A stretch of 64,000 bases of DNA from positions 1,532,711 to 1,596,710 of the forward strand of contig NW_004797359.1 of the NCBI RefSeq assembly GCF_000002075.1. Reading direction: 5' to 3'. Below are positions 8,146-59,811 of the stretch, piece by piece. The notes under the pieces are model-generated. The model was not told the DNA's origin. It did no database searches and worked only from the letters and a program-made list of their open reading frames with translations. The stretch is from Aplysia californica (lineage: Eukaryota). Each line of letters begins with the position of its first letter. Position 1 is the stretch's first letter. The position numbers were made by a program, and so were the translations under genes.

Positions 8146-8948
8146 CAATGGAGAAGCACAGGCTGCTTTCATATCTTTGAATAGGATTTGGAAGACCAGA
8201 AATATCTCACTTCGAACAACGTGTGAGACATGGAACCCATCTCAGACTTGCATAAAAAGAGGATCCAGGTTTTCTAGGACAAGTGCTTGGCGCTCATATG
8301 ACCTTATGCAGTTGCGAGCGCCGTAAAACCTCTACTAAAACTAAACCAGGAAAAGTGTCTAAAAAAGTTACTGAGGATCAGATGGGTTTTTTTAGTAAGT
8401 GGTTTTTTTGGTGTAAAAGTTTTAAGGCGCTTGCAACACAATTAGGTCATATAAGTGCTAAAGACTAGAGGCGTTACAAGAGAGTAACAAACACAAAAAA
8501 TAAGGAGGAAAGATAAGGAGGAGAGATAAGGACGATAGATATTTGATAGGAAAGAAGAAGCAAACCACACAAGAGCACCCGCCAACCACCCACAGGATCA
8601 GAAATCTGATGGACAGACAAGGTCACCGATGAGGAAGTGTTTTAAAGTAAAACAAGACAGATCCCAGTCAGAGATGAGGTAGGAAGAAGGCTGTGGCGAT
8701 GGAATGGACATACTCTCAGGAAGCCAGGCAGATGCATTTAAAAAAGTGTTGGATTGGAATCTTGAGGGTAAAAGATCTTGAGGAGAAAACGCGTGGAACC
8801 GGGAGAAGAATCATAGAAATTGATGTACAGAAAAGTGAGAAGACGGAATAACATCACAAGATGCTAGCCCAGAATAGATAAAGGTGGAAAGTGTTTGCTC
8901 GTGGCCAGACCCTGGTGTAGGGTGAGAAAGGCAATGATGATGATGGTG
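8146..8948 (+). mobile_element. 5'-truncated, decayed RTE-clade LINE 3' end (interrupted by retroposons)
   Basis: Remnant peptides AQAAFISLNRIWKTRNISLRT and RRLWRWNGHTLRKPG..VLDWNLEGKR, then a (GAT)n tail. The same 3' end is on the minus strand at ~2388-2460 and ~30872-30995. Confidence 0.75.
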
Positions 8949-9520: not shown

Positions 9521-9628
9521 GGTTTCATAACTGAGGCAAACAGTTTTATAACCGAGGTAAAAAGTTTATAACTAAGGTATAAAGTTATATAACTGAGGCA
9601 AACAGTTTTATAACTGAGGTAAAAAGTT

Positions 9629-12379
9629 TTACAACTGAGGCTGGCAGTTGCTGTCCAGTTCTCGCGTCTGCTGTACCACCAAGACCTGGGGGGGCAGAGC
9701 CACACTGTGTCGGGTCATGGCCGGGTGGAGGGGTGCTTGCGGCGGCAGCGGGTGGGGGAAGGGCAGCCTCTGGTGCTGTGGCTGCACGCCGAGCTGCTGC
9801 TGGTGCTGGGGGAGCAGCGGGTGGTGGGCGTGGTGCGGGGGCAGAAGCTCCTGCAGGTGTTGGCTCGACGGCTGAGAATCAGCAACAGCGCTGGGCTGAT
9901 AAACTTGCTGATACAAGCGCTGCTGATGCTGTTGCGCTTCAAACTCTCGTGCTTCCACCTGTATGTGTAGAGGCGGAGGTGGGGGCGGTGGAAGACTGAG
10001 GGGTTGCAGCTCGAGCCGATTGTGACTGTCTTGCTGCAGGGGAATAAACGTCTGCGTCGCGGTGAGCAGAGTGGCTGTTGTCTCCCTGCTCACTTCCACG
10101 ACAGGAGGCTGCACGCTGGGCACAGATATCAAACGCTGGTGTCTTTGCTGTTGCTGCAGTAATTCACATTGCTGCTGTTGCTGCTGCTGCTGTTGCTGTT
10201 GTTCGTGTTGAAGCTGCTGTTGATACTGCTGTTCAGGCGTATCCCGATCTTGTTGAAGAGGTATCGTTTTGCTTTGCTCTGACTTCAGATTCCTCTCATC
10301 ATCCTCTTCTCTCCCACGTTGCACCTCGCCTTCAGGCACTTGTAACCCGTGTGACTTGACATGATTCCTAAAGGTGGAGAGCCACGTAAACGACTTCCCA
10401 CATACCTGACAGTGGTGTGGCTTCTCTCCCGTGTGTACGAGTCGATGGCGCCGCAATGACCACTTCACGGAAAAACACGCCCCGCAGATCTCACACGTAT
10501 ACGGCTTCTCCCCAGAGTGGGACTTTCGGTGGTTGGCGAGGTAGAACTTCCGCGAAAACTTCATACCACAATCCGGGCACTCGTGCTCCTTCACGGCCGA
10601 GTGGCGCCGTAAGTGAATGTTGAGATTAGTCCGTTGTGAAAAGCAACTACCACACAGCTCGCACACAAAAGACTTTTCTCCGGAATGCACAACAGAATGT
10701 GTTTTCAAGGACGCGCGGTCGGTGAAGCTCTTGTCACACCTGTCGCACTTAAAGCGACGGTCTCCTGTATGCAGCTTCTGATGACGGTACAATTCATAGA
10801 TTCTGTAAAACGATGTGCCACACAGGTCACAGGTGTGACCTTTCTGTCTGTTCGGGTCATGACGTTTCATGTGAGCTTTGCAGTCAGCTTTACGGGAAAA
10901 CGCCTGGGGGCAATGAGGGCATTGATACGGTTTCTGCCCTGTGTGACACTTCATGTGGTCTTCATAAGCGGAAGAACACGCCAGAGTTTTATCACAAATG
11001 GTGCAGTGGCAGGTGTGGATTTTCATGTGGTTCTTATAGGATCTTCGACCTACAAAGCTTCTTTTGCAAATAGCACAATGGTGGGTTTCAAGATGTCGAG
11101 CCATTGAGACTTTCTTTGGTTTGTATTCAATCCCTTTGTGTTTTGATGACATGTGTCTATGCAATTGGTGAGGATATGAAAACTTAGTTCCACAAATTTC
11201 ACATTCACATCGATGGATTTTTATATGCTTCAGGTACTCCCCCTTTTTCCTGAAGGATTTCATACAGATGCTGCAAGAGAAGGAGGTTTTGAGGGAATTC
11301 CCTTTACCGATTTGTAAACCATCTGCTGGTTTTGTAAGTCTACTAGGTTCATCTTTCTCCTCCTCTACACCCACAGGAACACTTTGGGGGCCAAGGTTAG
11401 CTTCTAAAATCTCACAACCTTCAGGTTCAATATTTTCATCGCAGTTATTCACTGGGATCTCTTCTTCCTCATCATCCGGAGGACATACTGACGGACTGTC
11501 TTTCCCATCACAATCCACAGACAGAATGTCCTCCTCCTCCTCTGCTTCCTCAGTCACATCAACAGATACAGGCACTGGCACATTCGATCGCTCTCTGCTT
11601 TTACAACTCTTTTTTGACTTTTTGGAGGGCTTTGACTGTGAGACACCTTTCCTCTTTGGTTTAGAAGCCCCTTCATCAACTCTCTTACCTGAATCTTTTT
11701 TCCGGTCCACGAGTCTTTGAGCTCTTTTCGAAGTTCTTGAACGTGTTTTCACGAAAACTTCTTGTTTTTTAGTCTGTGCTCGCGTTTTCCTAACTTTCAG
11801 CGGTTTCGGAGCCGCTTTAGATTCTGTGACTTTTTCTTTGAGATTCTCGGGTGTCTCATGCTGAGAAAACCTATCGAGAATATCTCTCAACGGCAAAGGT
11901 GGAGAACTTTTGACATACTGCTGAAGGGCTGAAGAGAACATGCCTTTTCTGACAAACTGTTCCTTGATGTACACAGCTTTGTTTTCTTCTAGAAACTCAC
12001 AGGACTCTGCAAGAACCTCGAGAGCTTTCAAATAATCTTCAGCCTCTTCATCTTTCCGCCGCAGTCTCCCGAAGAACACAAGTCGCTGGAATAAGACGAA
12101 AATGTAAGGCAAACACAGATCTTCCAACCTTTCCATTAGAGTCATCAACAAAGAAGTATCCCGTTCACTGACATTCAAAGACTGTACTATATCTCTGAAT
12201 CCTCTCTTGCTAGCAAAGCTCAGTAAAACAGAAGTACAGAGTCTATCACCTCTGTCTGACATTTCACTCCCACTTTGACACATCTCACTCTTCATCTCTC
12301 TCCAGAGAGTCAAAACAAGACATTCTAAAGCTAAGCTCCCAGGGAGCTCTTGGCCTAAGACTTTGATACTTGACCCCAT
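9629..12379 (-). CDS. C2H2 zinc-finger protein (916 aa, 11 fingers) with a diverged retrotransposon Gag-capsid-like N-terminus and Q/P-rich C-terminus (ZNF-A)
   Basis: Uninterrupted ORF with 11 CxxC..HxxxH units and TGEKP-type linkers. ATG is in AGGATGG context with an in-frame TGA just upstream; candidate acceptors at 12511-12512 and 12438-12439. aa ~25-175 align with the Gag-like region of ZNF-B. Confidence 0.93.
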   Translation of the reverse strand: MGSSIKVLGQELPGSLALECLVLTLWREMKSEMCQSGSEMSDRGDRLCTSVLLSFASKRGFRDIVQSLNVSERDTSLLMTLMERLEDLCLPYIFVLFQRLVFFGRLRRKDEEAEDYLKALEVLAESCEFLEENKAVYIKEQFVRKGMFSSALQQYVKSSPPLPLRDILDRFSQHETPENLKEKVTESKAAPKPLKVRKTRAQTKKQEVFVKTRSRTSKRAQRLVDRKKDSGKRVDEGASKPKRKGVSQSKPSKKSKKSCKSRERSNVPVPVSVDVTEEAEEEEDILSVDCDGKDSPSVCPPDDEEEEIPVNNCDENIEPEGCEILEANLGPQSVPVGVEEEKDEPSRLTKPADGLQIGKGNSLKTSFSCSICMKSFRKKGEYLKHIKIHRCECEICGTKFSYPHQLHRHMSSKHKGIEYKPKKVSMARHLETHHCAICKRSFVGRRSYKNHMKIHTCHCTICDKTLACSSAYEDHMKCHTGQKPYQCPHCPQAFSRKADCKAHMKRHDPNRQKGHTCDLCGTSFYRIYELYRHQKLHTGDRRFKCDRCDKSFTDRASLKTHSVVHSGEKSFVCELCGSCFSQRTNLNIHLRRHSAVKEHECPDCGMKFSRKFYLANHRKSHSGEKPYTCEICGACFSVKWSLRRHRLVHTGEKPHHCQVCGKSFTWLSTFRNHVKSHGLQVPEGEVQRGREEDDERNLKSEQSKTIPLQQDRDTPEQQYQQQLQHEQQQQQQQQQQQCELLQQQQRHQRLISVPSVQPPVVEVSRETTATLLTATQTFIPLQQDSHNRLELQPLSLPPPPPPPLHIQVEAREFEAQQHQQRLYQQVYQPSAVADSQPSSQHLQELLPPHHAHHPLLPQHQQQLGVQPQHQRLPFPHPLPPQAPLHPAMTRHSVALPPQVLVVQQTRELDSNCQPQL

Positions 12380-13420
12380 CCTGGCAAGTCTTCCTCACAA
12401 TGGAGCCGATTCACTGAGTTAAGACATTCGCAAAAATCTACAGGGACAGAAGAAGGGAACACGCTTCCACAGTCCTGGATCCAGGCCCAACATCATTGGC
12501 TCGACACAACCTGGGAAAAAACCCAGAATAAAAATATCAAATCATCAGGGCTATTTGGTGTATTTTTCTTTCAATCAGGGTGGGAAGGATATAACTTCAC
12601 AAACTTTCCTGAATCTCTCTACAAGACATGATGAGCACACTAGTAGTAAGTTCTTTTTCTTCATTTATCCACAAATATAAGGTATTTGAATAAAATTTTT
12701 GTGTAATATATATTTTTAAATTTAAATGGCATCTCTGCTTGATCGATACTAAAATGTTTATTCCATCATCAATGCAGAATTTATACTAAGTAGGAGGCTG
12801 GCTGCAGTAACACAGCCTGTCAGGGCCAACCCTGCTGTGTTGGACACTGCACCCTAGCAGAAAAACTAGAGATATATAAACTTTGACACGCAGGAATGTA
12901 ACTCAAATCTTAAGTGAGAGCTACAGAGTGAAAAACTAAGCCATTATTATATTATTAATACCACATCCACATACACCGGTAATTTTTTGGATTTCGTTTA
13001 AAGTGAATTACAAGAAATTATTGGCCTAAATCCTACAAAAAGTAAAGATATTCATGGGTGGAGTGAAGGCTACATGACATATATTGTGAAGCTTCCCCTA
13101 ACCTATGTACTACAGTCGACTCCACTTGTGATTGTGTTGAACTCCCTTGAGTTGATCTTTTTCTCGGGTTTCAGAACCTTTCTTTGTTTCTTTACAGGTC
13201 CCAAAGGTTAACTTTAACCTCAGATGAGTTTATCTCTCCCCCCCCCCCCCCCCCCCCCCCCCCCACTATTTAATGATTTTGTACTTACTGTAGCAATTCT
13301 ATTCATTTTTGGACTTCGCTCTTTGAAAAGTTATGTTTACTTGGCAGGGAACACAATTGTCATGATGCATCCCCATCGCTTACTAGAATGCTTTACAATC
13401 TTTGCTTTTCAGTGGCAGCG

Positions 13421-14398
13421 ATGGATACTCAGCTGCGCTCAGAGTGCCAGGGTCTTCTGGAGCAGCTGAAAGCTTCCCAGCGGCTGTTGACTGAACAGGT
13501 GTCTTCCCAAATGGGACGAGTGACTCTTGCTTCTAGTCAGAGATCTGGTGTCTCAACTACTTTTGATGACCGAGACCCCATTATTAGTTACAATCTAAGT
13601 AAAAATGCGAGCAAAAAGTCCTCAAAATGGAAATTTGGCAAAGATATCACAGCTGACGTTAATGTAGCTCAGGAGGCTGATACTGACCTCAAGCCATCCT
13701 TAGCCAGAGACAAGTTGTGTAGTCTGGCTAAGAGTCGAAATCGCCATGACAGCTTAGCCAGTGGGCTTAGTACTCAAGACAGCTTTAAACCAGGGAAGGA
13801 AAACTGTAATGTAGCAGACAGAACTTTAGGATATGACAGTCGTCCTTTATTATTATCATCATCAACCTCGTTGCTTGAGGGCAGAACCGCACTCTCAGAC
13901 TTCTCAAAGAATGAGATGGCATCTGTGGAAGACAATAATGCCGTGACATCCTCTTCCTGGCAGCCAGCAACGCCCATCACTCAGAGAAGACGTCAGCTCA
14001 TAGATCGTCACACTGCCGTACCCACCAAGCTCAATGCTAAGGAACTCAGAGATCTAGAGAAAGAAAGGTATTTGAATTTCAGCTACTCACACATTGAAGT
14101 TGATGATCATGTGACCCGCCTCAAGTCAACAGGGGACCTTTCTGAACCTGAAGAAACAGAGACTGGTGATAAAAAGACACAATCTTCATTTTCTACCGAA
14201 CATTCGCCTGCTGCATCTCATCTAACAAGTCTCCCCGATCGTGGTCCCACCAAACCTGAAAAGCAGGAGAGCTTCAATTCGCAGCTTCTTGATGATGGGA
14301 ACAATCGTAAGCTCAGCAAGTTTGTGAAGGAAGCTGCAGTGAAACCCAAGAGCATCCTCAACTCCAGCGCTTACTACAGCTTGAATTCAAGCAAGAGG
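13421..14398 (+). CDS. MIIP: MIIP coding exon 1
   Basis: Acceptor AG 13411-13412, ATG 13421, donor GTAAGC 14399; 326 open codons. Confidence 0.8.
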
Positions 14399-17300
14399 GT
14401 AAGCAAAAATATCTTATAAAATTTACTGGAACCATCCTCAAAGTTTTTCCTTTTAACCTGAAATCATGTGAGTTAAAAAAACAAAGATGAAAAAAGAAAG
14501 TATGACACGTATAAAAACTGTATGATTCTCTTTTTAGACATCTGTATTCTTTCTTTTCAGAAATTCAAGAAGAGAGATTTTTACCATTAATTACTGAACT
14601 TTTACAATCATGTTACTTGAATAGGCCTACTGAAAATAACATCAACTGTGACGTATCTAAATGCACTCTCTTGTCTTGATTTTTGCTGCATGATGTAATG
14701 AATGATGATATGATGATATCTGTCTGTCTGAATTTGTATTAGATTTAAATGAATCTGACTCTAGAACCATACTCTAAAACCTTGGATGTCTAGTATTTTG
14801 TGACATTGTTCTGACTTTGCCGTTCACCGTTGTCTGTTCCCAGAACAACTCAAGGGTACGATTCAACTCGTCTCAGTCCAGTGACTCCCAGACTCCACTG
14901 CCGGACCATCGCCTTCTCGGCTATGACTGGATTGCTGCCCTGCTGGACAATGACTCAGCTTTGATCAATCAGTCTGAGAGTTTCTTTGATGAGTTGAGGG
15001 ATTTTCGCAGAGCCAACAAAGACGAGTGCTCCAACCAGTTCTACATGAAGTAAGTGTGGATACGTCAATTTTTTTAATGTTTTGGGCTTTTTGGTTTTTA
15101 TTTTGATTCCTTGTTGACTGACTTATGTTGCTGATTAGATAGCTTTGATTGTTAGCCGCTAGTGCCTGTGATGTAGTAGTTAGGCTCTTCGCAGTTCATG
15201 CTGAAGACATTAGTTTCAATCTTATGTTGGGATGTCATTTTATCAAGTATCTTGCCATGTCCCCTGGGATCACGGATGCTAGTTCAAAGACATTTAAAAA
15301 CCTAAGCGGTAATGTGGGAATTTTCAAAAACCTGAAAGTCATCGTACAGAAAGATAAGATGGCAAAGACTACAAAAAACTAGTTTTAACATATGGGCCTT
15401 AAGAGGATAGGGGCTTTTTCAGGACTACTCTTCTGCTTCAAGACTTATCGTTTTGCATGTTGCGTAGTCGCCAGTTTTTAAACACGTACGTGCCGGCCCC
15501 AGTCTAAAAAACCTGCAGACCTAGGTCTGTTGAGGTTAAAAACCAGCGGGGCCGGCATATGCTGTATCCCGCCTTAAGCAGGTGGAAACAGCCTATGTCC
15601 TAATTGGTGTGAGTTGTATGAATGGAGACATGAAATATATTAATTGTGTAATAATTTGATTATTGGGCCATCCTCAAAATATGGAACATGTGTTTGTATT
15701 CTAAATGCTAGCTCCGACATTATAAAATCCATGCAAGAAGGGAAGATGACAGAAAGGGCAAGAGGGGAGATAAAGAGAAGTTGAGAAACCGTTTTGCTTG
15801 CAGGACTATGGAACCAGATATCTCACCCTCGTCTCATAGTTGTTTGCTGGTTTTTATGGATAAAGAGCTTCTTTTTTCCCACACAAACAAACAAATAAAC
15901 AACTATGCATCGTGTACAATCCTCAGAGGCCCTCACACCCTGGTGGACACAGAACCTTCTGAGGTGGTTGAGGCTCTCACGGAACCAAGTATGTTTGGGT
16001 TTTTTTTGTGTGTGTGTTTTGTGTTTTTTATATGAGTCTCAAACGTTGTCTGTGAGTTGTTGGCGGGTGCTCTGGTGTAGTTTGTTTCTTCTTTCCTATC
16101 AAACATCTGTTGTCCTTATCTCCCCTCCTTCTTTCTTGTGTATGTTACTCTCTTGTAACACATAATCCATTCTTCGGCACTTATATGACCTTATTGTGTT
16201 GCAAGTGCGTAAAACGCTTACTAAGACTAAAACTAAAACATTGTCTAGTATATCTCAGAAGTGCCAATTTTCCCTGATAAATCTTGAAATCCGGATGTCT
16301 GAAAATGTCTGGATTTTTACTGACTTTTACGTGATGTCATACTGCACTTTGTTCGAAAATACTCGTGATGGAATTATATTTAGAGATGTATTGATCAATA
16401 CAATCAGTAAATTTTGAGTATTCACACACATGCATTTCCACAAGGGTGCAGAAAATTTCTAAATTTTATTGTAGCGAGTTGGCATCTCTGCTGTTTGTGT
16501 TTTTGTTCTTGCTTTTCTCATTGTATGCAATATATCTGTAATGTGTTCTTAGATTGACTCTGTGTGTGGATGTATTGCGTTCTTTTAAATGAAAATGTTT
16601 GTGTGTATTAAGTCTCATAGACAAATATCTATTTATTCCTAGTGAACTCGTAATTACATGTACTTTTTTTGCTATTCACGGAGAAACCAAAATTTTCATT
16701 AGGCCTACTGTCTCTTATTACCAATTAAAAAAGAAAATTAAAAAAATATATTGTTAGTTTGTGGAAAAGATGATTTATTATGGTCATAGTTTTGATATGG
16801 ATTTACTCTGCTGCCTTCATTCAGAATTGTAAGTTCGAGGTAGTTACATGAAGATTATTTTTTTCAGAGGTTCGTCCTTACATTGTCAATGACAGACTTT
16901 TCACGGAGCCGTTTAGACCCAACCTTATCCCTTACGAAGATGAGGATATACCTCAAAGGCAGAAAAGCAAAGAGCCAAGTAAAGATAACCCTAGATTTGT
17001 CAGGTAATGTATTTTTTAATAATTCTAGTCATCATCATTATTTGATATCATCTTATTTGGTCCTTAATTTCTAATTGAATGTGCTGTCAAATCTACTCTA
17101 ATTGCAACCTGTTCAAGACAAACAAACTCTTCTCTCCCTCCCCCCTTTCCTGCTCCCTTGGTTTTGAAAAAATATTATAACGACATTGTTTTTAGATGTC
17201 TGCTAGTCTTACACAACTTTCCGCCTGAAGAGTGGGTGGCCGTCTTGGACAATTTCAACTATATTTGTGTCACGACGAGATGGAATCAGGGGATCGTCAG

Positions 17301-20133
17301 TTTTTGGGCAGGTTGAGTTATTTGTATCGCCTTGTAGCTTGTTTATTTGTCTTGCTTTTGACGAAAGAAATACCCATTTTTCTTTAATGCAGGTTGAGAT
17401 ATTTGCGATTGAAGGAGGTGGGGGTTGCCTTGTTTTAGAGGCAGTATTAGAGAGAAAATGGCTGCCAAAGTTTGGTTCTTTTCAAAGCCTGAGCGTCTGT
17501 GGAAACTGACAGTTTATGTTTTTTGTACCTTAAATCAATATTTTTCAGTAAAATCCTCACATAAATGGGTTCTTAAATGGACATAAAAGGTGTTGAGCCA
17601 AAAAAGCAAAATTTCTATAAAAATGACCTAACCAGCGAAAAAATGCCGCTTTCTTTACTTTTGTTTTAATCTAATGAGCGCCTGATTTCACCAAGCTGCC
17701 TCCCATATGTATTTGATGTTCCTTGAATATCATCCCAAGATTGGGGAAAAAAGAAAGATCACTATGAATAGGCCAGCCAAGGGAGTTATTATGAGTTTGT
17801 GTGGATTTTCTGATTTCAAGAGGAACAAACTGAACTATGTGATGGAAAAGATATATTTTAATTGAGGTTGCCGGTTCGGGGTTCAAGGCTCAGGCTTGAT
17901 ATTGTGTCCTTGGGAAAAGCACTTGACATGAATTTTCCTCACTTCAATCTGATATGAATGGGTATCCAGTTATAGACAAAGAAAGATCTTGTCTGTAAGT
18001 TAGTGTTTGAATGCCTGTAAAATGGTTTCTTTGCACTGTATGCTTCCCAGGAAATTGAACTTGCTTCAGAATTCTTTCAGGTCTGCTGGGGTAATATAGA
18101 TTGGAACATTCATAGAGTTTGCTTTTGAGCTGAAATGATCACTGTACAAATGCTATTTATTATGTATCATTATTACAGTATTTTACCCACCACTTTAACA
18201 CTTCATCATTTTCTCTCCCTATTATGTGTGTTTCAGGGTGAGCATTCCGCGGTCAACTCTTTCAACCCCATACCGTGTCAAACCACACAGACGACGCAGT
18301 TTCGATGCGGCTGACTCGTGTGCTCTTATGGATGTAAGCAAATCTCAGTAGATACCTCTCTTTCTCATGGCTTGATTTTTTTTTTACTGGTTTGGTTTTT
18401 TGGGTTTTAAAAAAAATTTTTTTGTGTTTAAACCTAGGGTGGATTGTTAGCGGGTGCTCTATTGTGGTTTGCTCCTTCTTTCCACTCTTTCCAGTCAACT
18501 CCGCTTGTATCTAAGTCATTTGAGTTGATCTTCGTTTAAATTGATCTCTTTCTCGAGACCCAGAACCTCTTCGTCTCTACAGGTCCCAACAGTTAAGTTT
18601 ATCTTTTTTCCACCCCTTCCCACACAACACCAATTCATCTCTCCTTTCATTTTAACGCCTCTCTCTAGCAGTACCTCTTATTTTTTTAACTTCAGATATT
18701 GTGTTGAATTTTGTCGTATATTGTACAGAACACACATTTTCTGTGGGTGGTTGGCGGGTGCTCTGGTGTGGTTTGCTTCTTCTTTCCTATCAAACATGTG
18801 TCGTTCTTATCTCCCCTCCTTCTTTCTTGTGTTTGTTACTCTCTGGTAACATCTCTGATCTTCGGCACTTATATGACCTTATTGTGTTGCAAGTGCCGTA
18901 AAACTTACTAAATCTAACACTTTTTTTATCAGCACTTATATGACCTAATTGTGTTGATGCAAATGCTTTAAACCTCTTACTTACCAAATAAACATGTTTT
19001 CTCGACCTCCGCAGCACTGCCTGCTGGGCTGGGAGAATACTCGGCCAGAGATGTTGCCGGCCGCCAAGTCCCTGGACCTGAACACAGAGGCGGGAACTCG
19101 ACAGGACTCAGTCGTCACGGTAAAGATCTACTTGTATTTTTGTTATTGCGCTCTCATTACTGTCAAAGTCTGTTTAAATAATCTTTTGTGAGTTTTTGTT
19201 TTTGTTTGTCTCTACTAACAACACTTCTCCCCCCCCTTTCCAACCAATATATTGATAGCTGAGTGCAAAATATTGGCAAACCCTAAATTGCAAAAGTAAT
19301 TGAGTAGAGAGACCAGGAGGGAGGGACAAACAGAATAGAGAGACAAAGAGGATGGAATGAGAAAGAGTAGAGAGGCAGGGAAGGAATGAGAGAGTAGAGA
19401 GACAAGGAGGGAGGGAAAGAGGAGATCATACAAACTGTCCCCGGGGTTTTATGTACCCTGCATAATTTAGCAAAATTTGATCATTTTTTGCATAATTTCT
19501 GATTATTTTCCTTTATCATTCTTGGTTAAATTTAACAGAATCGCATAATTTCACATTTTTGGGCTCAGTTTGCATAATTTCAGAATTTTTCTTGCATAAA
19601 ACGATGGGGACAGTACAAAGAGGGAGGGAGAGAAAGAGTGGAGAGACAAGGAGGGAGGGTGAGAGAAAATGTAGAGACAAGGAGGAAGGGAGAACAAAAT
19701 TAAAGAGAGAAGAAAGAAACAAGGAGGGAGGGAGAGAGAAATTAAAGAGAAGAGGAAGAGAGAGAACAAGCCATGGCAACCTATCACCATATCTTTTTTT
19801 TTATCTTCACAGAGTCTTGCGGAGGCAGAGCGCCTGGCAACTGGTCCTCGCCACGCCGGCTGGCCCTTGGTCCGGTCCCATGGGCGGCTTCAGACTCTGC
19901 CTACCTGGCGCAAACACTACCTGGACACCACGCTCAACATGACGCAGCCCCCAGCGGCAGCCAACAGCTCACGCGCCAGCTCACATTCCGCGGGGGTCAC
20001 TGGTGCAAAACGAGTCACGGATCGCTTACTGCAGTCCACCTACTCCAACATGTACGAGATGGAGAGACTGAAGCAGGAGAGGGAGCTGGAGAGGAAGAGG
20101 GAGGAGGAAGAGAGGGGCAAAGGGAAGAATTGA
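13421..20133 (+). CDS. MIIP: Migration and invasion-inhibitory protein homolog, 7 coding exons, ~634 aa (span includes introns)
   Basis: Exons 13421-14398, 14844-15049, 15927-15988, 16868-17003, 18237-18333, 19015-19119, 19813-20133; all GT-AG and phase-compatible. MIIP motifs LGYDWIA, FFDELRDFRRANKDEC, VNDRLF, RVSIP..HRRRSFDAADS, HCLLGW, LDL. Confidence 0.9.
14844..15049 (+). CDS. MIIP: MIIP coding exon 2
   Basis: LLGYDWIAALLD...FFDELRDFRRANKDEC; AG/GT bounded. Confidence 0.92.
15927..15988 (+). CDS. MIIP: MIIP coding exon 3
   Basis: GPHTLVDTEPSEVVEALTEP; phases 2/1 fit its neighbours. Confidence 0.75.
16050..16239 (+). mobile_element. Family A copy
   Basis: GTTGGCGGGTGCTCTGGTG...CGGCACTTATATGACCTTATTGTGTTGCAAGTGC..ACTAAAACTAAAA. 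Confidence 0.8.
16868..17003 (+). CDS. MIIP: MIIP coding exon 4
   Basis: VRPYIVNDRLFTEP...PRFVR; AG/GT bounded. Confidence 0.88.
18237..18333 (+). CDS. MIIP: MIIP coding exon 5
   Basis: VSIPRSTLSTPYRVKPHRRRSFDAADSCALMD. Confidence 0.92.
18742..18912 (+). mobile_element. Family A copy
   Basis: Same sequence as 16050-16239. Confidence 0.8.
19015..19119 (+). CDS. MIIP: MIIP coding exon 6
   Basis: HCLLGWENTRPEMLPAAKSLDL. Confidence 0.92.
19435..19613. mobile_element. ~180 bp MITE, family D (CTGTCCCC TIR, 6-bp TSD)
   Basis: TIR CTGTCCCC...TTTTATG / CATAAAA...GGGGACAG; TSD TACAAA; other copies at 2030-2208 and 51781-51959. Confidence 0.85.
19813..20133 (+). CDS. MIIP: MIIP terminal coding exon
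   Basis: Acceptor 19811-19812, phase 0, open to TGA at 20131-20133. Confidence 0.8.
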   Translation, partial: SLAEAERLATGPRHAGWPLVRSHGRLQTLPTWRKHYLDTTLNMTQPPAAANSSRASSHSAGVTGAKRVTDRLLQSTYSNMYEMERLKQERELERKREEEERGKGKN

Positions 20134-37848: not shown

Positions 37849-40275
37849 AGAGTATTAGAGGTGCTAGAGGTGTTCCAAGAGAATAACAAACCTTAAAAAA
37901 GGAGGAGAGATCAGGATGGTAAACTGAATGGATAGGAAAGCAGGAGTAAACCACACAAGAGCACCCACCAACCACACGCAATAGCTTGTCTACACTTGCC
38001 AATAACTCATGTACTGGTACTAGCACTTTACTAGACTAGGAAGGTGAGAAGTGACACGAGGAGTGAAAAATCTTCTTATATTATATTTATTATATATATA
38101 CATGCATTTTTCATGAATTATGAATCTGGGACGAACTCTTAGCAGACAACACTGTCTACTAGCTGTTCCATGGCCTGCCTCTGAGCTCCTCATAACTTTT
38201 CTTTTGCAGAAGCTACAAAGTTTTTATGCAAAAATATCAATAATATTAGAAGCCAAGCTAAAGAAGATTCTAGAACAAGTAAAAAAAAAAAAGAAGTGTA
38301 CTGTAAACCACATGTTAGCTCTTGCTTTCCTTTCACCTTTAATGACAATTAACAATTTATTTTCAAAACTTTTTTGTTCATTAAAGATTAAATGGTTCAT
38401 TAACATGGGAGACAGTCGATAACAACATAAGAAAAAGAAGTAATCAAACACTTGAACTTGAAGTTGAAGGGCATGAAGAAATAAATGTGAGGCATCATGG
38501 TGAAATCAGGGGCCCGTCAAAATAATGAAATCAAAGAAATCGACATTTTTCGGAGTTTGGAAATTTTTATTTTAAAAATTTGGGGGGGGGGGGCTCAACA
38601 CCTTGTATTTTGTACGTCCATTCAGATACACTTTTATGAGTGGATTGTATGGAACAATGTTGATTAAAGGCACGAAAAAATGTAAATTAGCTGTTTACAA
38701 GGACTCTTGAGCTACGGAAATCACCAAACTTTGGCAGCCATTTTCTTGCTTATATTTTATTTCTGAAACAATGCAACCCCACCTCTTTCAATCCCAAATA
38801 TATCTCAGCTTCTATTCAAGATAAATGGATATTTTTTTCATTGAAAGCAAGGCAAATGAACAAACTCTAAGATGATAATAATAACAATAATAATAGATGG
38901 CATTTGTATAGCGCATATCCCCGCTCAACAGCAGGCTCTATGATACCACCAATAACTCCATAATATGCCCAAAATTTGACGAGTGCCCGATTCCACCGTT
39001 TTGTGACAGAAATTAAATAGAAAACATCATGTTCAAAGATCCACCAAGCCAAACAGTAATCCATTTCAAGTTGAAATGGAACTTCATTGTAAGCTGCAGA
39101 TGTTTAAAATAATGTTGTTTTCAAACAATGGTGTTCCACTGTAGTCTTTATTTGACTATATAATGCTGATCTAATACAAATAAATAATATTGAAGTCTGT
39201 AGGCTGCAGTATGTATACAATAAATATGCAATGCTTCCACTTCCACGTTGTAAAAAAATTTACTGTGTAACCTGCACATGTTACCAATTACAACAACGAG
39301 TTTTCACTGCACGCTGCCTATAATATAATGTTTACAATGAATGCTTTATCTTGAGAAGAGTTAATTGTTCTCTAGTCGGCACAATAATGATGCCATTTTC
39401 TGTAGAATTTCACAGTAGTCTGCACACACAGTCTGTATAATATACCTCTATAATAGATCAACATGTTAACCAATAAACTGCTTTCCAATAGTAGGATTTC
39501 ATTGCAGTCTGTACTATCGGCTGCACAAGTTCAGAACATTCCATGGAAAGTGACACAAATAAAGAGGAGGTGATGGCCTACTGAAAAAATCCTGTGCAGT
39601 GAGAGTTGAAAGAGACAAAGGATAATTCCGGCACATAATTATTTGCTTGAGTAAAGACAAGCGTACTGTATATAATATTGGAAAAACAATAGGCCCAATC
39701 CGATAGACAGAAATGAAAAGTCAGATTGATAGACACAGATGCGCGTACAACAGAGAGTGAGAGAGAATGGAGGAAGTAGGATCTTTCAGTAGCACCCTCC
39801 AACCAAGAATGTATGAGCCAAAAAATGTGAATGGGGGACTGTTTTGATCCAAAGAATCTAGTGCTTGATCCGATTCTCTTGTATGTCATATTCTAAACTA
39901 AGGCTAGATCCACTAGAACTGAGAAACCTGAGTGTCACAATTCTTCAAAAAGAAATTTGTTTTTTGTGCTTTAAAAAACCCCCAAATCAATTGACCATGA
40001 TGTAGCCTATCAGGAAAAGAAGGTGACAGTGGATAAGGCACATTCTTTTACAATTTTGGAAGCCAGCCCACAATGTAACAAGGCAAAGCTGAAGGCAGAA
40101 TCCCCAAGGGAGGAAGAAGAGAGGAAGGTCGAGATCCAACTGAAAACAAGCTCCGATTTTCAAGGAGGATCTCAGACTAAGACAGATAGAGGGAACAGCT
40201 GACTGGAGGTAGTTCTAAAAGATTGCCCAGAATAGAATAGAAGTGGGAGCCCTTCTTGACAGTCTTTACCAAATT

Positions 40276-40397: not shown

Positions 40398-43300
40398 TCA
40401 AGTGGCCAAGGTGTAGGTGGCGTGGGTCTGGGGATGGAGGTTGGGGGAGTTCATCTCCGAGTGTACGACTTGTCTGTGGAGGTCAGCCGACTGGCCCAGC
40501 TGCTGAAGGTGAAGCAGGTCAGAACCGGCGGTGGGCACTTGCTGCAGGTGCTGTTGCAGCTGCTCCAGCGGCTGACTCAGGGTCGGCTGCAGCTGTATTC
40601 TATGGGGGTCAGAGGTCAAGGGAGTTAAAGGTTGCAGCTCAGCATGATGGTGGAAGTTGGCGCCAGTATCTAGGCCGAGGGTACCCGTGCTCCCAGCTGT
40701 TGGTTTTCCTGAGAGCTGGAAGAGCAAAGGAGGGGCTTGTAGGACAGAGGCAGAGCTGAGGGGGACCCTGGTGTTACCACAGGTGATGGAGAAGCTGCTG
40801 TTGCTGCTGTTGCCAATTACATCGAGGAGATTTTCTGGAGCAGAATGGTTCAAGACTGGTGTCTGCTGTAGCGGCTGCAGAGTCTGATGATGTTGCTGTT
40901 GTTGCTGCTGATGTGGCTGTAGAATTTGCAGCTGCTGATTATGATCTGTGGTCAGTGCGGGCGGGTTGTGAATGCCATGCGTTCGTTTTAAGTGCTTGAG
41001 CACCGAGGAGCGCTTCGTGAACCTTGTGTTGCAGATGTGGCATCTATGAGGCTTTTCCCCCGAGTGCAGACGTTCGTGGCTTCTCATGTGTGAAGAGCAG
41101 GTGAAAGCCTTGCCGCAGACACCGCACTTGTAGCGTCTCTCCCGGTTGGAGTCGTGAGTCTTCATGTGATCACGGAGATAACCTTTCAGGGAGAATCTCG
41201 CACTACAGATGGGACATGAGAAAGGTCGTTCTCCTGTGTGCTTCCTCACATGTCCTTCCATGTGCGACCTCTGCAAAAACTTCTGGCCACAGATCGGGCA
41301 CTTGAACGGCTCCTGGCCACTGTGAATCTTCATGTGTTTACTCAGCTGGTGGTTCTCGCGGTATGACGCCCCACAGAGCGAGCACACAAACGGACGCTCG
41401 CCCGTATGTTTCATGAGGTGGAGTTTGAGCTTGCAGGAGTGAGTGAATGACAGGCCACAGAACTCACACGAGAATCTATCTGCAGGCTTCACACCTTCAT
41501 GGATTCTTTTCACGTGTTTTTTCATGCTGGACATCTGCGAGAAAGCCATGTCACAAATGGTGCACTTGTACGGCTTCTCTCCCGTATGCTTTCTCTCGTG
41601 GTTGCGAAGCTGGTACGACTTGAGGAACGCTGCACCACACGTGGCACAGACGTGGGGTCGCTCTCTGTTCTGAGAGTGGATCTTCATGTGATTGCGGAGG
41701 TAGTAGGATAGCTTGAAGCTGACTCCACATACGTTGCAGGTATGCGGCTTATGATCGAGGTGGGTCTGTACATGGTTGTTCAAGGTCGTCTTCAGCAAAA
41801 ATCTTCTCCCACAAGTGGCACACTCGTGTCGTTTCTCCCCGGTGTGAATGTTTTTGTGATTGATCAAGATGCTCTTCTCTGCAAATGAAGCTCCACAGAT
41901 TTCACACATGAAGGGCTTGGTGGCGTTGTGCTTGCTCATTGCGTGCAACTTCAACTTTGAAGGGTACTGGAACTGCACCCCACAGATATTGCATGGGTAT
42001 CTACTAGTGCGATGTTCTTTCCGCCGGTGCTGATTGTATTCCTGCATGCTGCGAAAAGTCAGATCACAGTCTTCACATTTCACTTTTTCCTCTTTTGAAT
42101 GGGATACTTTATGCTGATCTAAAGCTCTCTGACTGTCAAAAGTCATTGGGCAGTTGGCACATTTGAACGTGAGAGACTCTGGATGTTCCTGGCGCATGTG
42201 TTTGGTGCGGTGAGACGAGCTGAGAAAATTCACACCACAAATGTCACATTTGTTGACTTTCTTCCTGGAATGAGTCCGTTGTACATGACGCTTTAACAGG
42301 TTCCTCGTGGCATAGGAGGAACTACACTCTGAGCACTTGTGCTTGGCATTTTTCTGTAAGTCTCGCCTAAGGGGCAAATTTGGTCCACATGTAATACTGT
42401 CTCCACCATCTTCTGGGTGGCTTGCTGAAGAAATACACGACTCAAGTTTATTGACCTCTAGGCAGGCCTGTCTTTCATTTACTCCCACTGAGTGAGAGCT
42501 CACGTTGTTTTCAGGTACTCCAGAAGAGAGATCCACATCATCTTCAGAGAGATACATGGTACCCAAGAGGCTTTCCTGATACTCTTCTTGACGTTTCATT
42601 TCAACACTCTCTTGCTTGGGACTGTCTATGCCATCAAATGTGCTCGATACATCATTAAGTTTGGGCCCAGTTTCACTCTGACCCTGAACTGCATCTTTTT
42701 TAAACACACGACAGATGACAGTTTCTGAGGATGACTCGTCCTTTGAGACTTTCTGTTCAGCTACATCCACATCAGAGACGCCGTACCTGACCACTTTCTT
42801 CACGTTACGTTTGGGTCGTCCAGGCTGAGTGACAAGGCCAGAACCAGATGTAACAGCTTTCCTCTCACTTCTTTCATTCCGGTCACAGCTCTCAGCATGG
42901 ACATGTGTCAGATTATCACCATTACCCCTCACTGCAGCATTATTGTTCACCAATGGATTACAAGATGAAGTGTCAACATTTTCACTATCACTGTCACAAT
43001 TTTCATTAAATGATAACTTCACTTGCAGACCAAACTTAGCACCTTGACACCTTCCAAAATCTTCAGAGGCAAAATTCAAACAGGTAGCTATGATTTGTTG
43101 AAGATTAACTTTATCCACACTTTGCAACTTTTGTCTCAGTTTTTCATCTCTCACTCCCTTCACAATTCTGGAAGACAGATACCTCTTTTTATGCTCCTCA
43201 AAACAACAATTGTCTGCCAGAGACAAGAGATCTACGATAAATGAGTGAACACTTTCATCATTGCCTTGACATCGGGTAAAAAACTTATGTCTTTCATACA

Positions 43301-43601
43301 GCAACAAGAAGCCAGGAACACAAAAATGTTCAATCTCTGTCAAAATATTTTCAAGCTCTTGTGGTTCAATTCTAATCTTAGAACTTGACAAATGGCTGTT
43401 GATTCTTTCCAAAAGCAGTTCACTCCCTCTGAGTAAGTATCTAAAGATGGAAGCTGTAGTGGCATGAGGAGTGAAATGAGATCTGTCAATTGCTGGCACA
43501 TTTTGACAGAAGAGTTGAAACCTGGCCTTGAGGATGGTCCATCTGCTGGAATCTGGCAAATCCTGGGAGCTCTTCTCGGGCCGCTGAATAGCAAACTCCA
43601 T
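40398..43601 (-). CDS. C2H2 zinc-finger protein (1067 aa, 16 fingers) with an N-terminal Ty3/Gypsy Gag-capsid-like domain and Q-rich tail (ZNF-B)
   Basis: Uninterrupted ORF with 16 C2H2 fingers. GCCATGG start with an in-frame upstream stop; polypyrimidine tract plus AG acceptor at 43657-43658. N-terminus contains HFCVP..YERHKFFTRCQGNDESVHSFIVDLLSLADNCCF..RIVKGVRDEKLRQKL. Confidence 0.95.
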   Translation of the reverse strand: MEFAIQRPEKSSQDLPDSSRWTILKARFQLFCQNVPAIDRSHFTPHATTASIFRYLLRGSELLLERINSHLSSSKIRIEPQELENILTEIEHFCVPGFLLLYERHKFFTRCQGNDESVHSFIVDLLSLADNCCFEEHKKRYLSSRIVKGVRDEKLRQKLQSVDKVNLQQIIATCLNFASEDFGRCQGAKFGLQVKLSFNENCDSDSENVDTSSCNPLVNNNAAVRGNGDNLTHVHAESCDRNERSERKAVTSGSGLVTQPGRPKRNVKKVVRYGVSDVDVAEQKVSKDESSSETVICRVFKKDAVQGQSETGPKLNDVSSTFDGIDSPKQESVEMKRQEEYQESLLGTMYLSEDDVDLSSGVPENNVSSHSVGVNERQACLEVNKLESCISSASHPEDGGDSITCGPNLPLRRDLQKNAKHKCSECSSSYATRNLLKRHVQRTHSRKKVNKCDICGVNFLSSSHRTKHMRQEHPESLTFKCANCPMTFDSQRALDQHKVSHSKEEKVKCEDCDLTFRSMQEYNQHRRKEHRTSRYPCNICGVQFQYPSKLKLHAMSKHNATKPFMCEICGASFAEKSILINHKNIHTGEKRHECATCGRRFLLKTTLNNHVQTHLDHKPHTCNVCGVSFKLSYYLRNHMKIHSQNRERPHVCATCGAAFLKSYQLRNHERKHTGEKPYKCTICDMAFSQMSSMKKHVKRIHEGVKPADRFSCEFCGLSFTHSCKLKLHLMKHTGERPFVCSLCGASYRENHQLSKHMKIHSGQEPFKCPICGQKFLQRSHMEGHVRKHTGERPFSCPICSARFSLKGYLRDHMKTHDSNRERRYKCGVCGKAFTCSSHMRSHERLHSGEKPHRCHICNTRFTKRSSVLKHLKRTHGIHNPPALTTDHNQQLQILQPHQQQQQQHHQTLQPLQQTPVLNHSAPENLLDVIGNSSNSSFSITCGNTRVPLSSASVLQAPPLLFQLSGKPTAGSTGTLGLDTGANFHHHAELQPLTPLTSDPHRIQLQPTLSQPLEQLQQHLQQVPTAGSDLLHLQQLGQSADLHRQVVHSEMNSPNLHPQTHATYTLAT

Positions 43602-59552: not shown

Positions 59553-59597
<45 letters not shown>

Positions 59598-59726
59598 ACA
59601 AAAACAAACACACATTCATAATCATACACTCAGACACACATACACACACAAATGCACACATACAGGTACCCATAAACATTCACAAACTCACATTAGCACA
59701 CACATTCACACATACAGGTATTCCTC

Positions 59727-59811
<85 letters not shown>

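What the first reader, a model, noticed from the sequence alone, without database searches (positions are those of the whole stretch)
11850..12379. A second, far more diverged Gag-capsid-ZNF 28 kb away implies an old gene family
Seen: ZNF-A LMERLEDLCLPYIFVLFQRLVFFGRLRRKDEEAEDYLKALEVLAESCEFLEENKAVYIKEQFVRKGM aligns almost gap-free to ZNF-B ILTEIEHFCVPGFLLLYERHKFFTRCQGNDESVHSFIVDLLSLADNCCFEEHKKRYLSSRIVKGV (shared C.P, R..FF.R, DE, L..LA..C.F.E, K..Y, KG). Both genes have one coding exon, the same strand and the same order: capsid, charged linker, fingers, Q-rich tail. Their finger arrays differ (11 vs 16). Inference: one domestication, then duplication and long purifying selection with diversifying DNA specificity, as in KRAB/SCAN/ZAD-type families. 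The two proteins may heterodimerise through the capsid domain.
Basis: partly seen in the sequence, partly recalled or inferred. Interest (0 to 1): 0.8.

Follow-up and report, generated by a model that had tools for sequence, protein, structure and literature searches.

The report
Old capsid-zinc-finger gene family in snails
Two neighbouring sea-hare (Aplysia) genes each join a retrotransposon capsid domain to a zinc-finger DNA-binding array; each has its own counterpart in a pond snail, so this is an old, apparently undescribed snail parallel to the vertebrate SCAN zinc-finger family.

Summary
ZNF-A (9629-12379, minus strand, 916 aa, 11 fingers) and ZNF-B (40398-43601, minus strand, 1067 aa, 16 fingers) share an N-terminal domain of about 175 aa (31% identity over 91 aa, E 3e-11, z = 16 against shuffles).

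That domain is a truncated Ty3/Gypsy Gag capsid:
- It matches the first ~165 aa of thousands of "K02A2.6-like" Gag-Pol polyproteins.
- It models as a two-lobed all-helical fold whose structural matches are nearly all retroviral, PNMA2, PEG10 or MOAP1 capsids.
- Pfam does not detect it.

The family is old. Lymnaea stagnalis carries an A-type ORF (598 aa) and a B-type ORF (1065 aa) as reciprocal best matches. B-type orthologues keep all 16 fingers in order, and further paralogue groups exist in Candidula and Biomphalaria.

Phylogeny cannot place the fast-evolving A-type. However, all nine fused proteins and none of 70 native Gags share a hydrophobic replacement of a near-invariant K-N pair, which favours one domestication.

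"Diversifying specificity" holds between paralogues only; within the B-type the array is conserved. Heterodimerisation is untested.

The parts
9629..12379 (-). ZNF-A: complete single-ORF gene, 916 aa (A-type capsid-zinc-finger protein)
   Evidence: ORF list. In-frame stop 18 nt upstream of the ATG. Collinear with the Lymnaea ORF L005 9812..11608 over A aa 50-677, E 8e-87.
11855..12379 (-). ZNF-A capsid (CA)-like domain, aa 1-175. Helices 18-104 form the N-lobe; helices 113-174 form the C-lobe (CA-CTD-like, pLDDT above 90).
   Evidence: Aligns to the Gag part of Gag-Pol P0002, E 5e-10. Profile search. AF2 model pLDDT 79.8. Foldseek: RSV CA-CTD TMt 0.73, rmsd 2.7; also PNMA2 and HIV CA.
11282..11854 (-). 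ZNF-A charged linker (~191 aa; 20% K+R, 20% D+E), probably disordered
   Evidence: Composition. No sequence conservation even between orthologues.
10349..11275 (-). ZNF-A array of 11 C2H2 fingers
   Evidence: Regex and Pfam. Weakly collinear with the 10 fingers of the Lymnaea A-type: 7.25 against 3.9 +/- 1.6 identities per finger.
9632..10348 (-). ZNF-A Q/P-rich tail (236 aa; 23% Q, 14% P). Absent from the Lymnaea A-type, which ends after the last finger.
40398..43601 (-). ZNF-B: complete single-exon gene, 1067 aa (= P0001; B-type)
   Evidence: ORF. Public gene model identical to the ORF. 1:1 orthologues P0023 (Physella), L006 ORF (Lymnaea) and P0009.
43047..43601 (-). ZNF-B capsid (CA)-like domain, aa 1-185, two lobes
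   Evidence: BLASTP to Gag-Pol P0002, E 2e-9. AF2 pLDDT 80.2. Foldseek: PNMA2 capsid TM 0.49/0.51 over 181 columns; HTLV-1 and HIV-1 CA; MOAP1 and PEG10 CA-CTD TMt ~0.7. Retroviral Gag dominates the viral library.
42336..43046 (-). ZNF-B linker (~235 aa; charged, S/T-rich)
40977..42335 (-). ZNF-B array of 16 C2H2 fingers, conserved finger by finger in Physella, Lymnaea and P0009
40401..40976 (-). ZNF-B Q/S/P-rich tail (190 aa)

Best explanation
ZNF-A and ZNF-B are two anciently separated paralogues of a gene family of euthyneuran gastropods. In this family the capsid (CA) part of a Ty3/Gypsy 'K02A2.6-like' Gag sits at the N-terminus of a tandem C2H2 zinc-finger protein encoded by one exon. Both CA lobes are kept; the nucleocapsid zinc knuckle and all of Pol are lost.

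Shown:
- The domain is homologous to native Gag and models with a capsid fold.
- Fused relatives exist in Aplysia, Lymnaea, Physella, Biomphalaria and Candidula.
- The A-type and B-type were already distinct before Aplysia and Lymnaea diverged.
- The B-type keeps its finger array and most DNA-contact residues. The A-type evolves much faster over its whole length.

Inferred:
- One domestication and fusion occurred, followed by duplications.
- The proteins are sequence-specific nuclear transcription factors. The fingers read DNA, and the Q/P-rich tail (where present) activates transcription.
- The ex-capsid domain acts as a protein-protein association module, giving homo- or hetero-oligomers, as the CA-CTD-derived SCAN domain does in vertebrates.
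- The stretch just before the C-lobe is the best candidate for a new interface. There every fused protein has replaced a near-invariant basic-Asn pair of native Gags with bulky hydrophobic residues.
For: Gag origin:
- The A domain hits Gag-PR-RT-RNaseH protein P0002. BLASTP of A and B to its aa 58-160 gives E 5e-10 and 2e-9.
- The A+B profile finds 4308 proteins at E <= 1e-3. Most long ones match at aa ~6-165, followed by a CCHC knuckle near aa 225, protease near 285 and YxDD near 560.
- Natives carry RVT_1, RT_RNaseH, Integrase_H2C2 and rve and are named K02A2.6-like.
- 10 of 42 family members hit Pfam Retrotrans_gag weakly.
- The family profile reaches the HIV-1 CA end plus NC.

Fold: AF2 models have pLDDT ~80, with the C-lobe above 90. 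Foldseek top hits are almost all retroviral or domesticated capsids.

Family and age:
- Fused relatives are P0009, P0023 (Physella), P0089 (Candidula), P0090, P0096 (Biomphalaria) and P0012 (Lymnaea). All those checked have a single coding exon.
- Lymnaea has an A-type ORF (L005, 598 aa) and a B-type ORF (L006, 1065 aa). Best matches are reciprocal: A-LymA 33%, E 3.5e-19; B-LymB 32%, E 2e-26; cross pairs E ~1e-10.
- A and LymA form a clade with SH-aLRT 99.
- B-type fingers show a 16/16 diagonal, and 40/64 contact residues are identical to Physella.

Single origin:
- Without A, the seven other fused domains split from all natives with SH-aLRT 99.8.
- ML trees under LG+C20 put all fused proteins on one side of a branch.
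- At A positions 93, 94 and 96, all 9 fused proteins and 0 of 70 natives have bulky hydrophobic residues. Natives have N at position 94 in 68/70. At position 85, natives have F in 60/70 and no fused protein does.
- A scores 80.8 bits on the fused profile built without it, against 70.1 +/- 4.5 on size-matched native profiles. LymA scores 56.2 against 43.0 +/- 3.7. Natives score about half as well on the fused profile as on their own.
- A and B have the same orientation, lie 28 kb apart, and have no pol remnant nearby.
Against: - Placement of A on a backbone tree is unresolved. Expected likelihood weight is 0.46 for positions in or at the stem of the fused clade and 0.54 inside natives; 41 of 62 native-internal placements are not rejected by the AU test.
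- A constrained tree that excludes A from the fused clade is not rejected (p-AU 0.68).
- Support for monophyly of all fused proteins is only 36-66.
- All fused rows have long branches, so long-branch attraction could inflate the 99.8 split. The hydrophobic signature could be convergent if it serves the same new function.
- Finger arrays of A, B, P0089 and P0096 show no collinearity with one another.
- Linkers and tails are not alignable.
- No flank synteny was found with Biomphalaria, Physella or Candidula, and in Lymnaea the two types lie on different contigs.
- Foldseek E-values are weak (0.02-1).
- Function (DNA binding, oligomerisation, activation) is entirely inferred. There are no expression data, and ZNF-A is not in the protein collection.
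Confidence: 0.75

Rival explanations
1. Independent captures. The A-type and B-type arose from two separate fusions of Gags from different K02A2.6-like Gypsy lineages to unrelated C2H2 genes. Their resemblance is only the general Gag resemblance.
For: - A's best single-sequence BLAST hits are native Gag-Pols (26% identity, E ~1e-13). They rank ahead of the other-species fused proteins (P0009, P0089) and score higher than B (46.6 bits).
- The ML placement under LG+F+G4 is next to native P0078, and native placements hold 54% of the likelihood weight.
- There is no collinearity of finger arrays, linkers or tails between A and B.
Against: - The fused-specific hydrophobic signature is shared by A, LymA and all other fused proteins and by 0 of 70 natives.
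- Both A-type members score better on the fused profile than on any size-matched native profile.
- The mixture-model ML trees group them.
- The Gag is cut back in the same way in both: both lobes kept, knuckle lost.
- Both are single-exon genes in the same orientation, 28 kb apart.
- Lack of finger collinearity also holds between B, P0089 and P0096, whose Gag domains do group together.
Confidence: 0.17
2. ZNF-A is a decaying or neutral duplicate (or an assembly or annotation artefact) rather than a working gene. Its divergence reflects relaxed constraint.
For: - A has by far the longest branch (about 4 changes per site).
- It is absent from the protein collection although B is present.
- One finger position between fingers 2 and 3 is degenerate.
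- It has lost several near-invariant family residues (N94, E98, Q107).
Against: - The ORF is 916 codons without interruption, with 11 intact fingers.
- The domain still models confidently as a capsid fold.
- An orthologous intact 598-aa ORF survives in Lymnaea with shared A-type substitutions (R in place of the family Q; an identical seven-residue core around the invariant Cys) and collinear fingers. Survival in two lineages separated since the base of Euthyneura requires purifying selection.
Confidence: 0.04
3. The capsid domain still assembles. The proteins form Arc- or PNMA2-like capsids or higher-order lattices, for example to package nucleic acid or to restrict related retrotransposons by co-assembly with their Gag, rather than acting as simple dimerising transcription factors.
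For: - Unlike SCAN, both capsid lobes are retained.
- The best full-length structural match of B is the PNMA2 capsid protein.
- Related K02A2.6-like elements are abundant in animals.
Against: - A 600-900-aa appendage of linker, 10-16 fingers and tail is hard to fit in a closed shell.
- The nucleocapsid knuckle is lost.
- Near-invariant native residues at the lobe junction are replaced in all fused proteins.
- Deep conservation of B's DNA-contact residues points to a fixed DNA target.
Confidence: 0.08

Closest known systems
SCAN-domain C2H2 zinc-finger family of vertebrates (SCAN derived from the C-terminal capsid domain of a Gmr1/Gmr30-like Gypsy Gag; Emerson and Thomas 2011, as summarised in PMC8321522)
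   Same: A Ty3/Gypsy Gag capsid piece sits at the N-terminus of tandem C2H2 proteins. The family has several paralogues whose finger arrays differ. The expected role is an oligomerisation module on transcription factors.
   Different: - The host clade differs: euthyneuran gastropods, not tetrapods.
- There is no Pfam SCAN hit for A, B or any of 42 family members. No SCAN chain appears in the PDB sequence or fold searches.
- Both capsid lobes are kept (~175 aa) rather than the CTD alone (~84 aa).
- The donor Gag is K02A2.6-like.
- There is no KRAB partner.
- Only a few members per genome are known so far.
Stand-alone domesticated Gags: Arc/dArc, PNMA, RTL/SIRH (PEG10), MOAP1
   Same: Two-lobed Ty3/Gypsy capsid fold. 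PNMA2, PEG10 and MOAP1 are among the best structural matches. Pol is lost.
   Different: Those proteins are not fused to DNA-binding arrays, and several still form capsids. They are vertebrate or insect genes. The 2021 survey of Gag co-options lists none in molluscs. It searched with Pfam Gag models, which miss this Gag type.
Native 'K02A2.6-like' Ty3/Gypsy Gag-Pol polyproteins (e.g. P0003, P0027, P0028, P0049)
   Same: The Gag N-terminal ~165 aa is homologous along its whole length, with the same conserved W, C.P, F.R.Q, E, C.F and G positions.
   Different: - Natives continue into a CCHC knuckle, protease, RT, RNase H and integrase. A and B continue into a linker and C2H2 fingers.
- Natives keep F85, K/R93 and N94 (A numbering). 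All fused proteins have changed them.
KRAB- and ZAD-type lineage-specific C2H2 expansions
   Same: An N-terminal effector or association domain plus a tandem C2H2 array. Paralogues have unrelated arrays. A and B are neighbours on the same strand.
   Different: The B-type is a conserved 1:1 orthologue with fixed finger number and contact residues across Aplysia, Lymnaea and Physella. That is not the rapid turnover typical of KRAB clusters. Only two members lie in this 64-kb window.

Membership tests
Ty3/Gypsy Gag capsid-derived domain | Sequence homology to the Gag region of Gag-Pol polyproteins of LTR retrotransposons | tested here: met
   BLASTP of A and B to P0002 Gag, E 5e-10 and 2e-9. The profile finds 4308 proteins, the long ones being Gag-PR-RT-RH-IN.
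Ty3/Gypsy Gag capsid-derived domain | Two-lobed all-alpha capsid fold (CA-NTD plus CA-CTD) | tested here: met
   AF2 pLDDT ~80, with 8-10 helices. Foldseek hits are almost all capsids: PNMA2 TM ~0.5 over the full length; RSV, PEG10 and MOAP1 CTD TMt 0.68-0.73. E-values are modest (0.02-1).
Ty3/Gypsy Gag capsid-derived domain | Match to a curated Gag model (Pfam Retrotrans_gag or clan) | tested here: not met
   No Pfam hit for A or B at E <= 1. Only 10 of 42 relatives hit Retrotrans_gag weakly. The curated models do not cover this Gag type.
Ty3/Gypsy Gag capsid-derived domain | Nucleocapsid CCHC knuckle after the capsid (complete Gag) | tested here: not met
   No CCHC in A, B or any fused relative, whereas natives have one at aa ~215-250. 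The fused proteins therefore hold a truncated Gag (CA only).
SCAN domain family | Match to the SCAN model (PF02023) or to SCAN structures | tested here: not met
   No SCAN hit. No SCAN chain.
SCAN domain family | N-terminal capsid-derived domain followed by tandem C2H2 fingers | tested here: met
SCAN domain family | Domain mediates selective homo- or hetero-dimerisation | not testable with these tools
   No multimer prediction or experiment was available.
SCAN domain family | Vertebrate (tetrapod) origin from a Gmr1/Gmr30-like Gag CTD | tested here: not met
   Hosts are euthyneuran gastropods. Both lobes are retained. The nearest natives are K02A2.6-like.
Tandem C2H2 zinc-finger transcription factors | Multiple canonical C-x2-C-x12-H-x3-5-H fingers with TGEKP-type linkers | tested here: met
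   11 fingers in A and 16 in B. Pfam zf-C2H2 E 7e-35 and 7e-47; zf-H2C2_2 E 5e-35 and 6e-74.
Gastropod capsid-ZNF family (defined here) | Fused-specific signature at the lobe junction: aliphatic residue instead of F at A-pos 85; bulky hydrophobic residues at A-pos 93, 94 and 96 | tested here: met
   All 9 fused proteins, including A, B and the Lymnaea A-type, and 0 of 70 natives.
Gastropod capsid-ZNF family (defined here) | Monophyly of all fused capsid domains against native Gags | tested here: inconclusive
   Without A the split has SH-aLRT 99.8. With the A-type, ML trees agree but support is only 36-66. Placement likelihood weights are 0.46 against 0.54. The AU test does not reject exclusion of A.
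KRAB-like fast-evolving ZNF clusters | Rapid turnover of finger number and DNA-contact residues between related species | tested here: not met
   B-type: 16/16 fingers collinear in Physella, Lymnaea and P0009; 40/64 contact residues identical to Physella; 69% identity of the array to Lymnaea. The A-type is faster (42% identity) but still collinear.

The most novel reading that the evidence does not exclude
Euthyneuran gastropods independently reinvented the SCAN principle. A complete two-lobed Gypsy capsid was domesticated once, remodelled at the lobe junction into a hydrophobic association surface, and fused to C2H2 arrays. The result is a small network of transcription factors (A-type, B-type, and the Candidula and Biomphalaria types) that pair selectively through their ex-capsid domains. 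The adjacent Aplysia genes A and B would be a heterodimerising pair.
Probability: 0.3. Interest if true: 0.75.

Novelty: new variant of a known kind. Interest (0 to 1): 0.6.

Why it matters
Capsid domestication is known mainly from vertebrates and insects (Arc, PNMA, RTL, SCAN). The survey I read lists no mollusc case, and its Pfam-based screen could not see this Gag type.

A second, independent marriage of a Gypsy capsid with C2H2 arrays would show that "capsid as transcription-factor association module" is a repeatable evolutionary solution. It differs from SCAN in being in another phylum, retaining both lobes, and having been stable since the base of Euthyneura.

It also offers a natural comparison for asking which capsid surfaces get repurposed. 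Practically, it gives Aplysia, Lymnaea and Biomphalaria workers a defined transcription-factor family. Its members are now annotated only as "zinc finger protein 540-like/836". In Lymnaea they are split into partial models, and ZNF-A is absent from the protein set.

Tried and rejected
- Pfam on the N-domains: no hit.
- PDB sequence search with the single domains: only chance hits (GET4, GET3, CLM-1) at E ~1.
- Word-based protein searches: B's domain found only itself. A's domain within the whole protein found one Gag-Pol. A's domain alone found nothing. So A has no close relative in the length ranges searched.
- "MEF..P.P" start and "C.P" as fused-specific markers: rejected. Natives have C.P too, and at least one native-clustering fragment starts with MEF.
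- Finger collinearity as proof of whole-gene duplication of A and B: none found. It is also absent between other paralogue groups, so it is uninformative.
- Linker and tail similarity: not significant even between orthologues.
- Flank synteny with Biomphalaria, Physella and Candidula loci: none beyond low-complexity matches.
- DNA similarity between the A and B flanks: the three matching blocks are interspersed repeats with many copies in the window, not duplication remnants.
- Careful (bootstrap) IQ-TREE runs did not finish in the time allowed. Quick-search trees, a placement scan and AU tests were used instead.
- Pfam on neighbouring ORFs (13388-14419 and others): nothing.
- tRNA scan of the window: none.

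Constraints observed:
- No N stretch was filled.
Only alignments and profiles for searching were made.
Full report
**Where we are.** ZNF-B's exact protein is encoded on scaffold KB941485.1 of assembly GCA_000002075.2. That assembly is Aplysia californica AplCal3.0, a euthyneuran heterobranch gastropod. The window holds several N runs; none was filled.

**1. The observation.**
- The window has two long ORFs on the minus strand. ZNF-A is 9629..12379 (916 aa). ZNF-B is 40398..43601 (1067 aa).
- The N-terminal ~180-190 aa align with 31% identity over 91 residues and two gaps, E 3e-11.
- The Smith-Waterman score is 113 against 31 +/- 5 for 2000 shuffles. That is z = 16, and no shuffle reached it.
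- A has 11 canonical C2H2 fingers and B has 16.
- Both proteins run domain, charged linker, fingers, Q/P-rich tail.
- B's public gene model equals the ORF.
- A has an in-frame TGA 18 nt upstream of its ATG, so Met-1 is the first possible start in this exon.

**2. What the shared domain is.**
- Pfam and PDB sequence searches see nothing in the two domains themselves.
- The word-based search with A's domain found one protein, P0002. It is a Gag-protease-RT-RNase H polyprotein. Both A and B align to its aa 58-160, E 5e-10 and 2e-9.
- Because the family scans left the domain open, I ran the exhaustive HMMER search with an A+B profile. It found 4308 proteins at E <= 1e-3 and 159 at E <= 1e-10.
- The long hits match at their first ~165 residues. 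They then carry a CCHC knuckle near aa 225, a protease motif near 285 and YxDD near 560.
- Pfam finds RVT_1, RT_RNaseH, Integrase_H2C2 and rve in them. Public names are "K02A2.6-like".
- Ten of 42 relatives weakly hit Pfam Retrotrans_gag, and none hits SCAN.
- AlphaFold2 models built on a 42-sequence alignment are all-helical and two-lobed, with pLDDT ~80 and above 90 in the C-lobe.
- Foldseek returns almost only capsids. For B these are the PNMA2 capsid (TM 0.49/0.51 over 181 columns), HTLV-1 and HIV-1 CA, and MOAP1 and PEG10 CA-CTD (TMt ~0.7). For A they are RSV CA-CTD (TMt 0.73, rmsd 2.7 A) and PNMA2. The viral library gives retroviral Gags.
- The E-values are modest (0.02-1), but the hits are uniform.
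- The domain is therefore a Ty3/Gypsy Gag reduced to its capsid part. The nucleocapsid knuckle and Pol are gone, and no pol remnant lies near either gene.

**3. A family, and how old it is.**
- Among the 150 listed hits, five full-length proteins carry 9-16 C2H2 fingers behind the Gag domain: P0009, P0023, P0089, P0090 and P0096.
- Their sources are Physella acuta, Candidula unifasciata and Biomphalaria species. A Lymnaea stagnalis fragment (P0012) also belongs. All are euthyneuran gastropods.
- The three loci fetched are single coding exons.
- A finger-by-finger identity matrix shows a perfect diagonal of B against P0009 and against Physella P0023. Up to 16-18 of 19 variable positions are identical per finger.
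- Forty of 64 canonical contact residues are identical between B and Physella, and several fingers are identical at all four.
- A, P0089/P0090 and P0096 show no such diagonal with B or with one another.
- The decisive find came from A's best-matching fragment, P0098 from Lymnaea (37% identity over 95 aa). Its locus holds one uninterrupted 598-aa ORF, L005 9812..11608, with the Gag domain, a linker and 10 fingers.
- That ORF is collinear with A from aa 50 to aa 677, E 8e-87.
- It shares A-specific substitutions. These are R in place of the family's near-invariant Q, and an identical seven-residue core around the invariant Cys.
- Its fingers are collinear with A's at 7.25 identities per finger, against 3.9 +/- 1.6 off the diagonal.
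- Lymnaea also has the full B-type: L006 10001..13198, 1065 aa, 16 fingers, with a 16/16 diagonal and 69% identity in the array.
- Best matches are reciprocal. A-LymA gives E 3.5e-19 and B-LymB gives E 2e-26, while cross pairs give E ~1e-10. A and LymA form a clade with SH-aLRT 99.
- Hence the A-type and B-type were already distinct before Aplysia (Tectipleura: Aplysiida) and Lymnaea (Panpulmonata: Hygrophila) diverged. From memory, not tested here, that is on the order of a few hundred million years.
- "Old gene family" is therefore right.
- The evidence is the orthologues, not the A-B divergence. The capsid domain is only ~32% identical even between B-type orthologues whose fingers are 69% identical.

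**4. One domestication or two?**
They say nothing about A-B kinship.
- Without A, the seven other fused domains separate from all natives with SH-aLRT 99.8.
- With A, or with A plus LymA, ML trees under the site-heterogeneous model put all fused proteins on one side of a branch. Support is only 36-66.
- I scanned all 75 attachment points under LG+F+G4. Expected likelihood weight is 0.46 for positions inside or at the stem of the fused group and 0.54 inside natives.
- A constrained tree that keeps A out of the fused group is not rejected (p-AU 0.68).
- Phylogeny alone is therefore undecided. Long-branch attraction is a caveat for every fused row.
- Two other lines favour one origin.
  - (i) Just before the C-lobe, natives have F at A-pos 85 (60/70), K/R/T at 93 and N at 94 (68/70). 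All nine fused proteins, both A-type members included, have an aliphatic residue at 85. They have bulky hydrophobic residues at 93, 94 and 96. No native has the latter combination.
  - (ii) On profiles built without them, A scores 80.8 bits on the fused profile. It scores 70.1 +/- 4.5 (maximum 77.7) on size-matched native profiles. LymA scores 56.2 on the fused profile against 43.0 +/- 3.7 (maximum 51.2) on native ones. Natives score only about half as well on the fused profile as on their own.
- Both proteins also show the same truncation, the same single-exon structure, and the same orientation 28 kb apart.
- Taking these together, I put one domestication at roughly 0.75-0.8 and independent capture at about 0.17.
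- The flanks of A and B share only interspersed repeats. No synteny with other species' flanks was detected. In Lymnaea the two types lie on different contigs.

**5. How it most likely works (inferred).**
- Both proteins are sequence-specific DNA-binding factors.
- The B-type has a fixed, deeply conserved array and so presumably a conserved target.
- The A-type evolves much faster over its whole length. Its array is 42% identical to Lymnaea's. It has the longest capsid-domain branch in every tree. Its Q-rich tail is present in Aplysia and absent in Lymnaea.
- By analogy with capsid C-terminal domains and SCAN (established knowledge; SCAN as summarised in PMC8321522), the ex-capsid domain is most likely a self-association module. 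The remodelled hydrophobic junction is the candidate new surface.
- The Q/P-rich tails are candidate activation regions. This rests on my own knowledge of glutamine-rich activators, not on a test here.
- Nothing here tests oligomerisation, localisation or expression. The A+B heterodimer idea remains open.

**6. Comparison and novelty.**
- The closest known system is the vertebrate SCAN-C2H2 family.
- This family works like it in architecture, but it fails SCAN membership. There is no SCAN model or structure match. The host phylum and the donor Gag differ. Both lobes are retained.
- It is also unlike KRAB-type arms-race clusters, at least for the B-type.
- The 2021 survey of Gag co-options lists seven animal cases and none in molluscs. 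It screened with Pfam Gag models that miss this Gag type.
- Three further full-text searches found no description of a mollusc capsid-C2H2 family.
- I therefore rate it a new variant of a known kind. The qualifier is that the literature held here is incomplete.

**Limits.**
- Only the best 150 of 4308 hits could be inspected.
- The representative library clusters at 50% identity. Neither A nor B appeared as its own representative, since no hit was below 1e-30. The count of fused members and their taxonomic spread are therefore lower bounds.
- Careful bootstrap searches did not finish.
- No spliced model was used, so no joined-exon step arose.

Noticed in passing
window 9629-12379 (-); L005 9812-11608; L006 10001-13198: Annotation gaps. 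ZNF-A's exact protein is not in the 15-billion-protein collection although ZNF-B's is. In the Lymnaea stagnalis assembly both family members are intact single ORFs (598 and 1065 aa) but are annotated as strings of partial gene models (140 + 320 aa; 167 + 138 + 123 + 72 aa).
   Followed up: partly
ZNF-B 40977-43601 compared with L006 and P0023: Within the B-type orthologues the ex-capsid domain evolves far faster (32% identity) than the finger array (66-69% identity). This is the reverse of KRAB-type families, where fingers change and the effector domain is conserved.
   Followed up: partly
window 9522-9641: A 21-bp tandem repeat (5.8 copies, 81% matches) starts at ZNF-A's stop codon and runs into its 3' flank.
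   Followed up: no
window 13238-13264: A homopolymer run of about 27 G (read on the minus strand) lies ~0.9 kb upstream of ZNF-A's start. It sits between ZNF-A and the divergently oriented ORF 13388-14419.
   Followed up: no
window 13388-14419 (+): A 343-aa Ser-rich ORF lies head-to-head with ZNF-A, about 1 kb from its ATG. It has no Pfam match and may be an exon of an unrelated gene or may be spurious.
   Followed up: partly
window 8465-8589, 223-334, 16056-16159, 18747-18856, 25916-26010, 37864-37975, 54752-54859, 61265-61368 and others: An interspersed repeat of ~125 bp (73-84% identical copies, both orientations) has at least 9 copies in the window. A ~55-bp element (8286-8340) has ~10 copies. 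Copies lie downstream of both ZNF genes and mimic flank homology.
   Followed up: partly
window 59559-59809, 60154-61071, 61490-62413: A (CA)n microsatellite of 125 units is followed by an 18/36/54-bp satellite (~0.9 kb) and a 32-bp satellite (29 copies, 85% matches). The satellites produce the long spurious ORFs at 60107-60799.
   Followed up: no
P0003, P0010, P0037, P0077 (database proteins): Several top-scoring 'native' proteins are 1.8-4.4 kaa long, with two or three Gag, protease or RT copies. They are gene models that run through nested or tandem retroelement insertions. Only one (P0003) entered the reduced trees; its near-identical relatives, P0037 among them, were left out as duplicates, and P0010 and P0077 were not used at all.
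   Followed up: no
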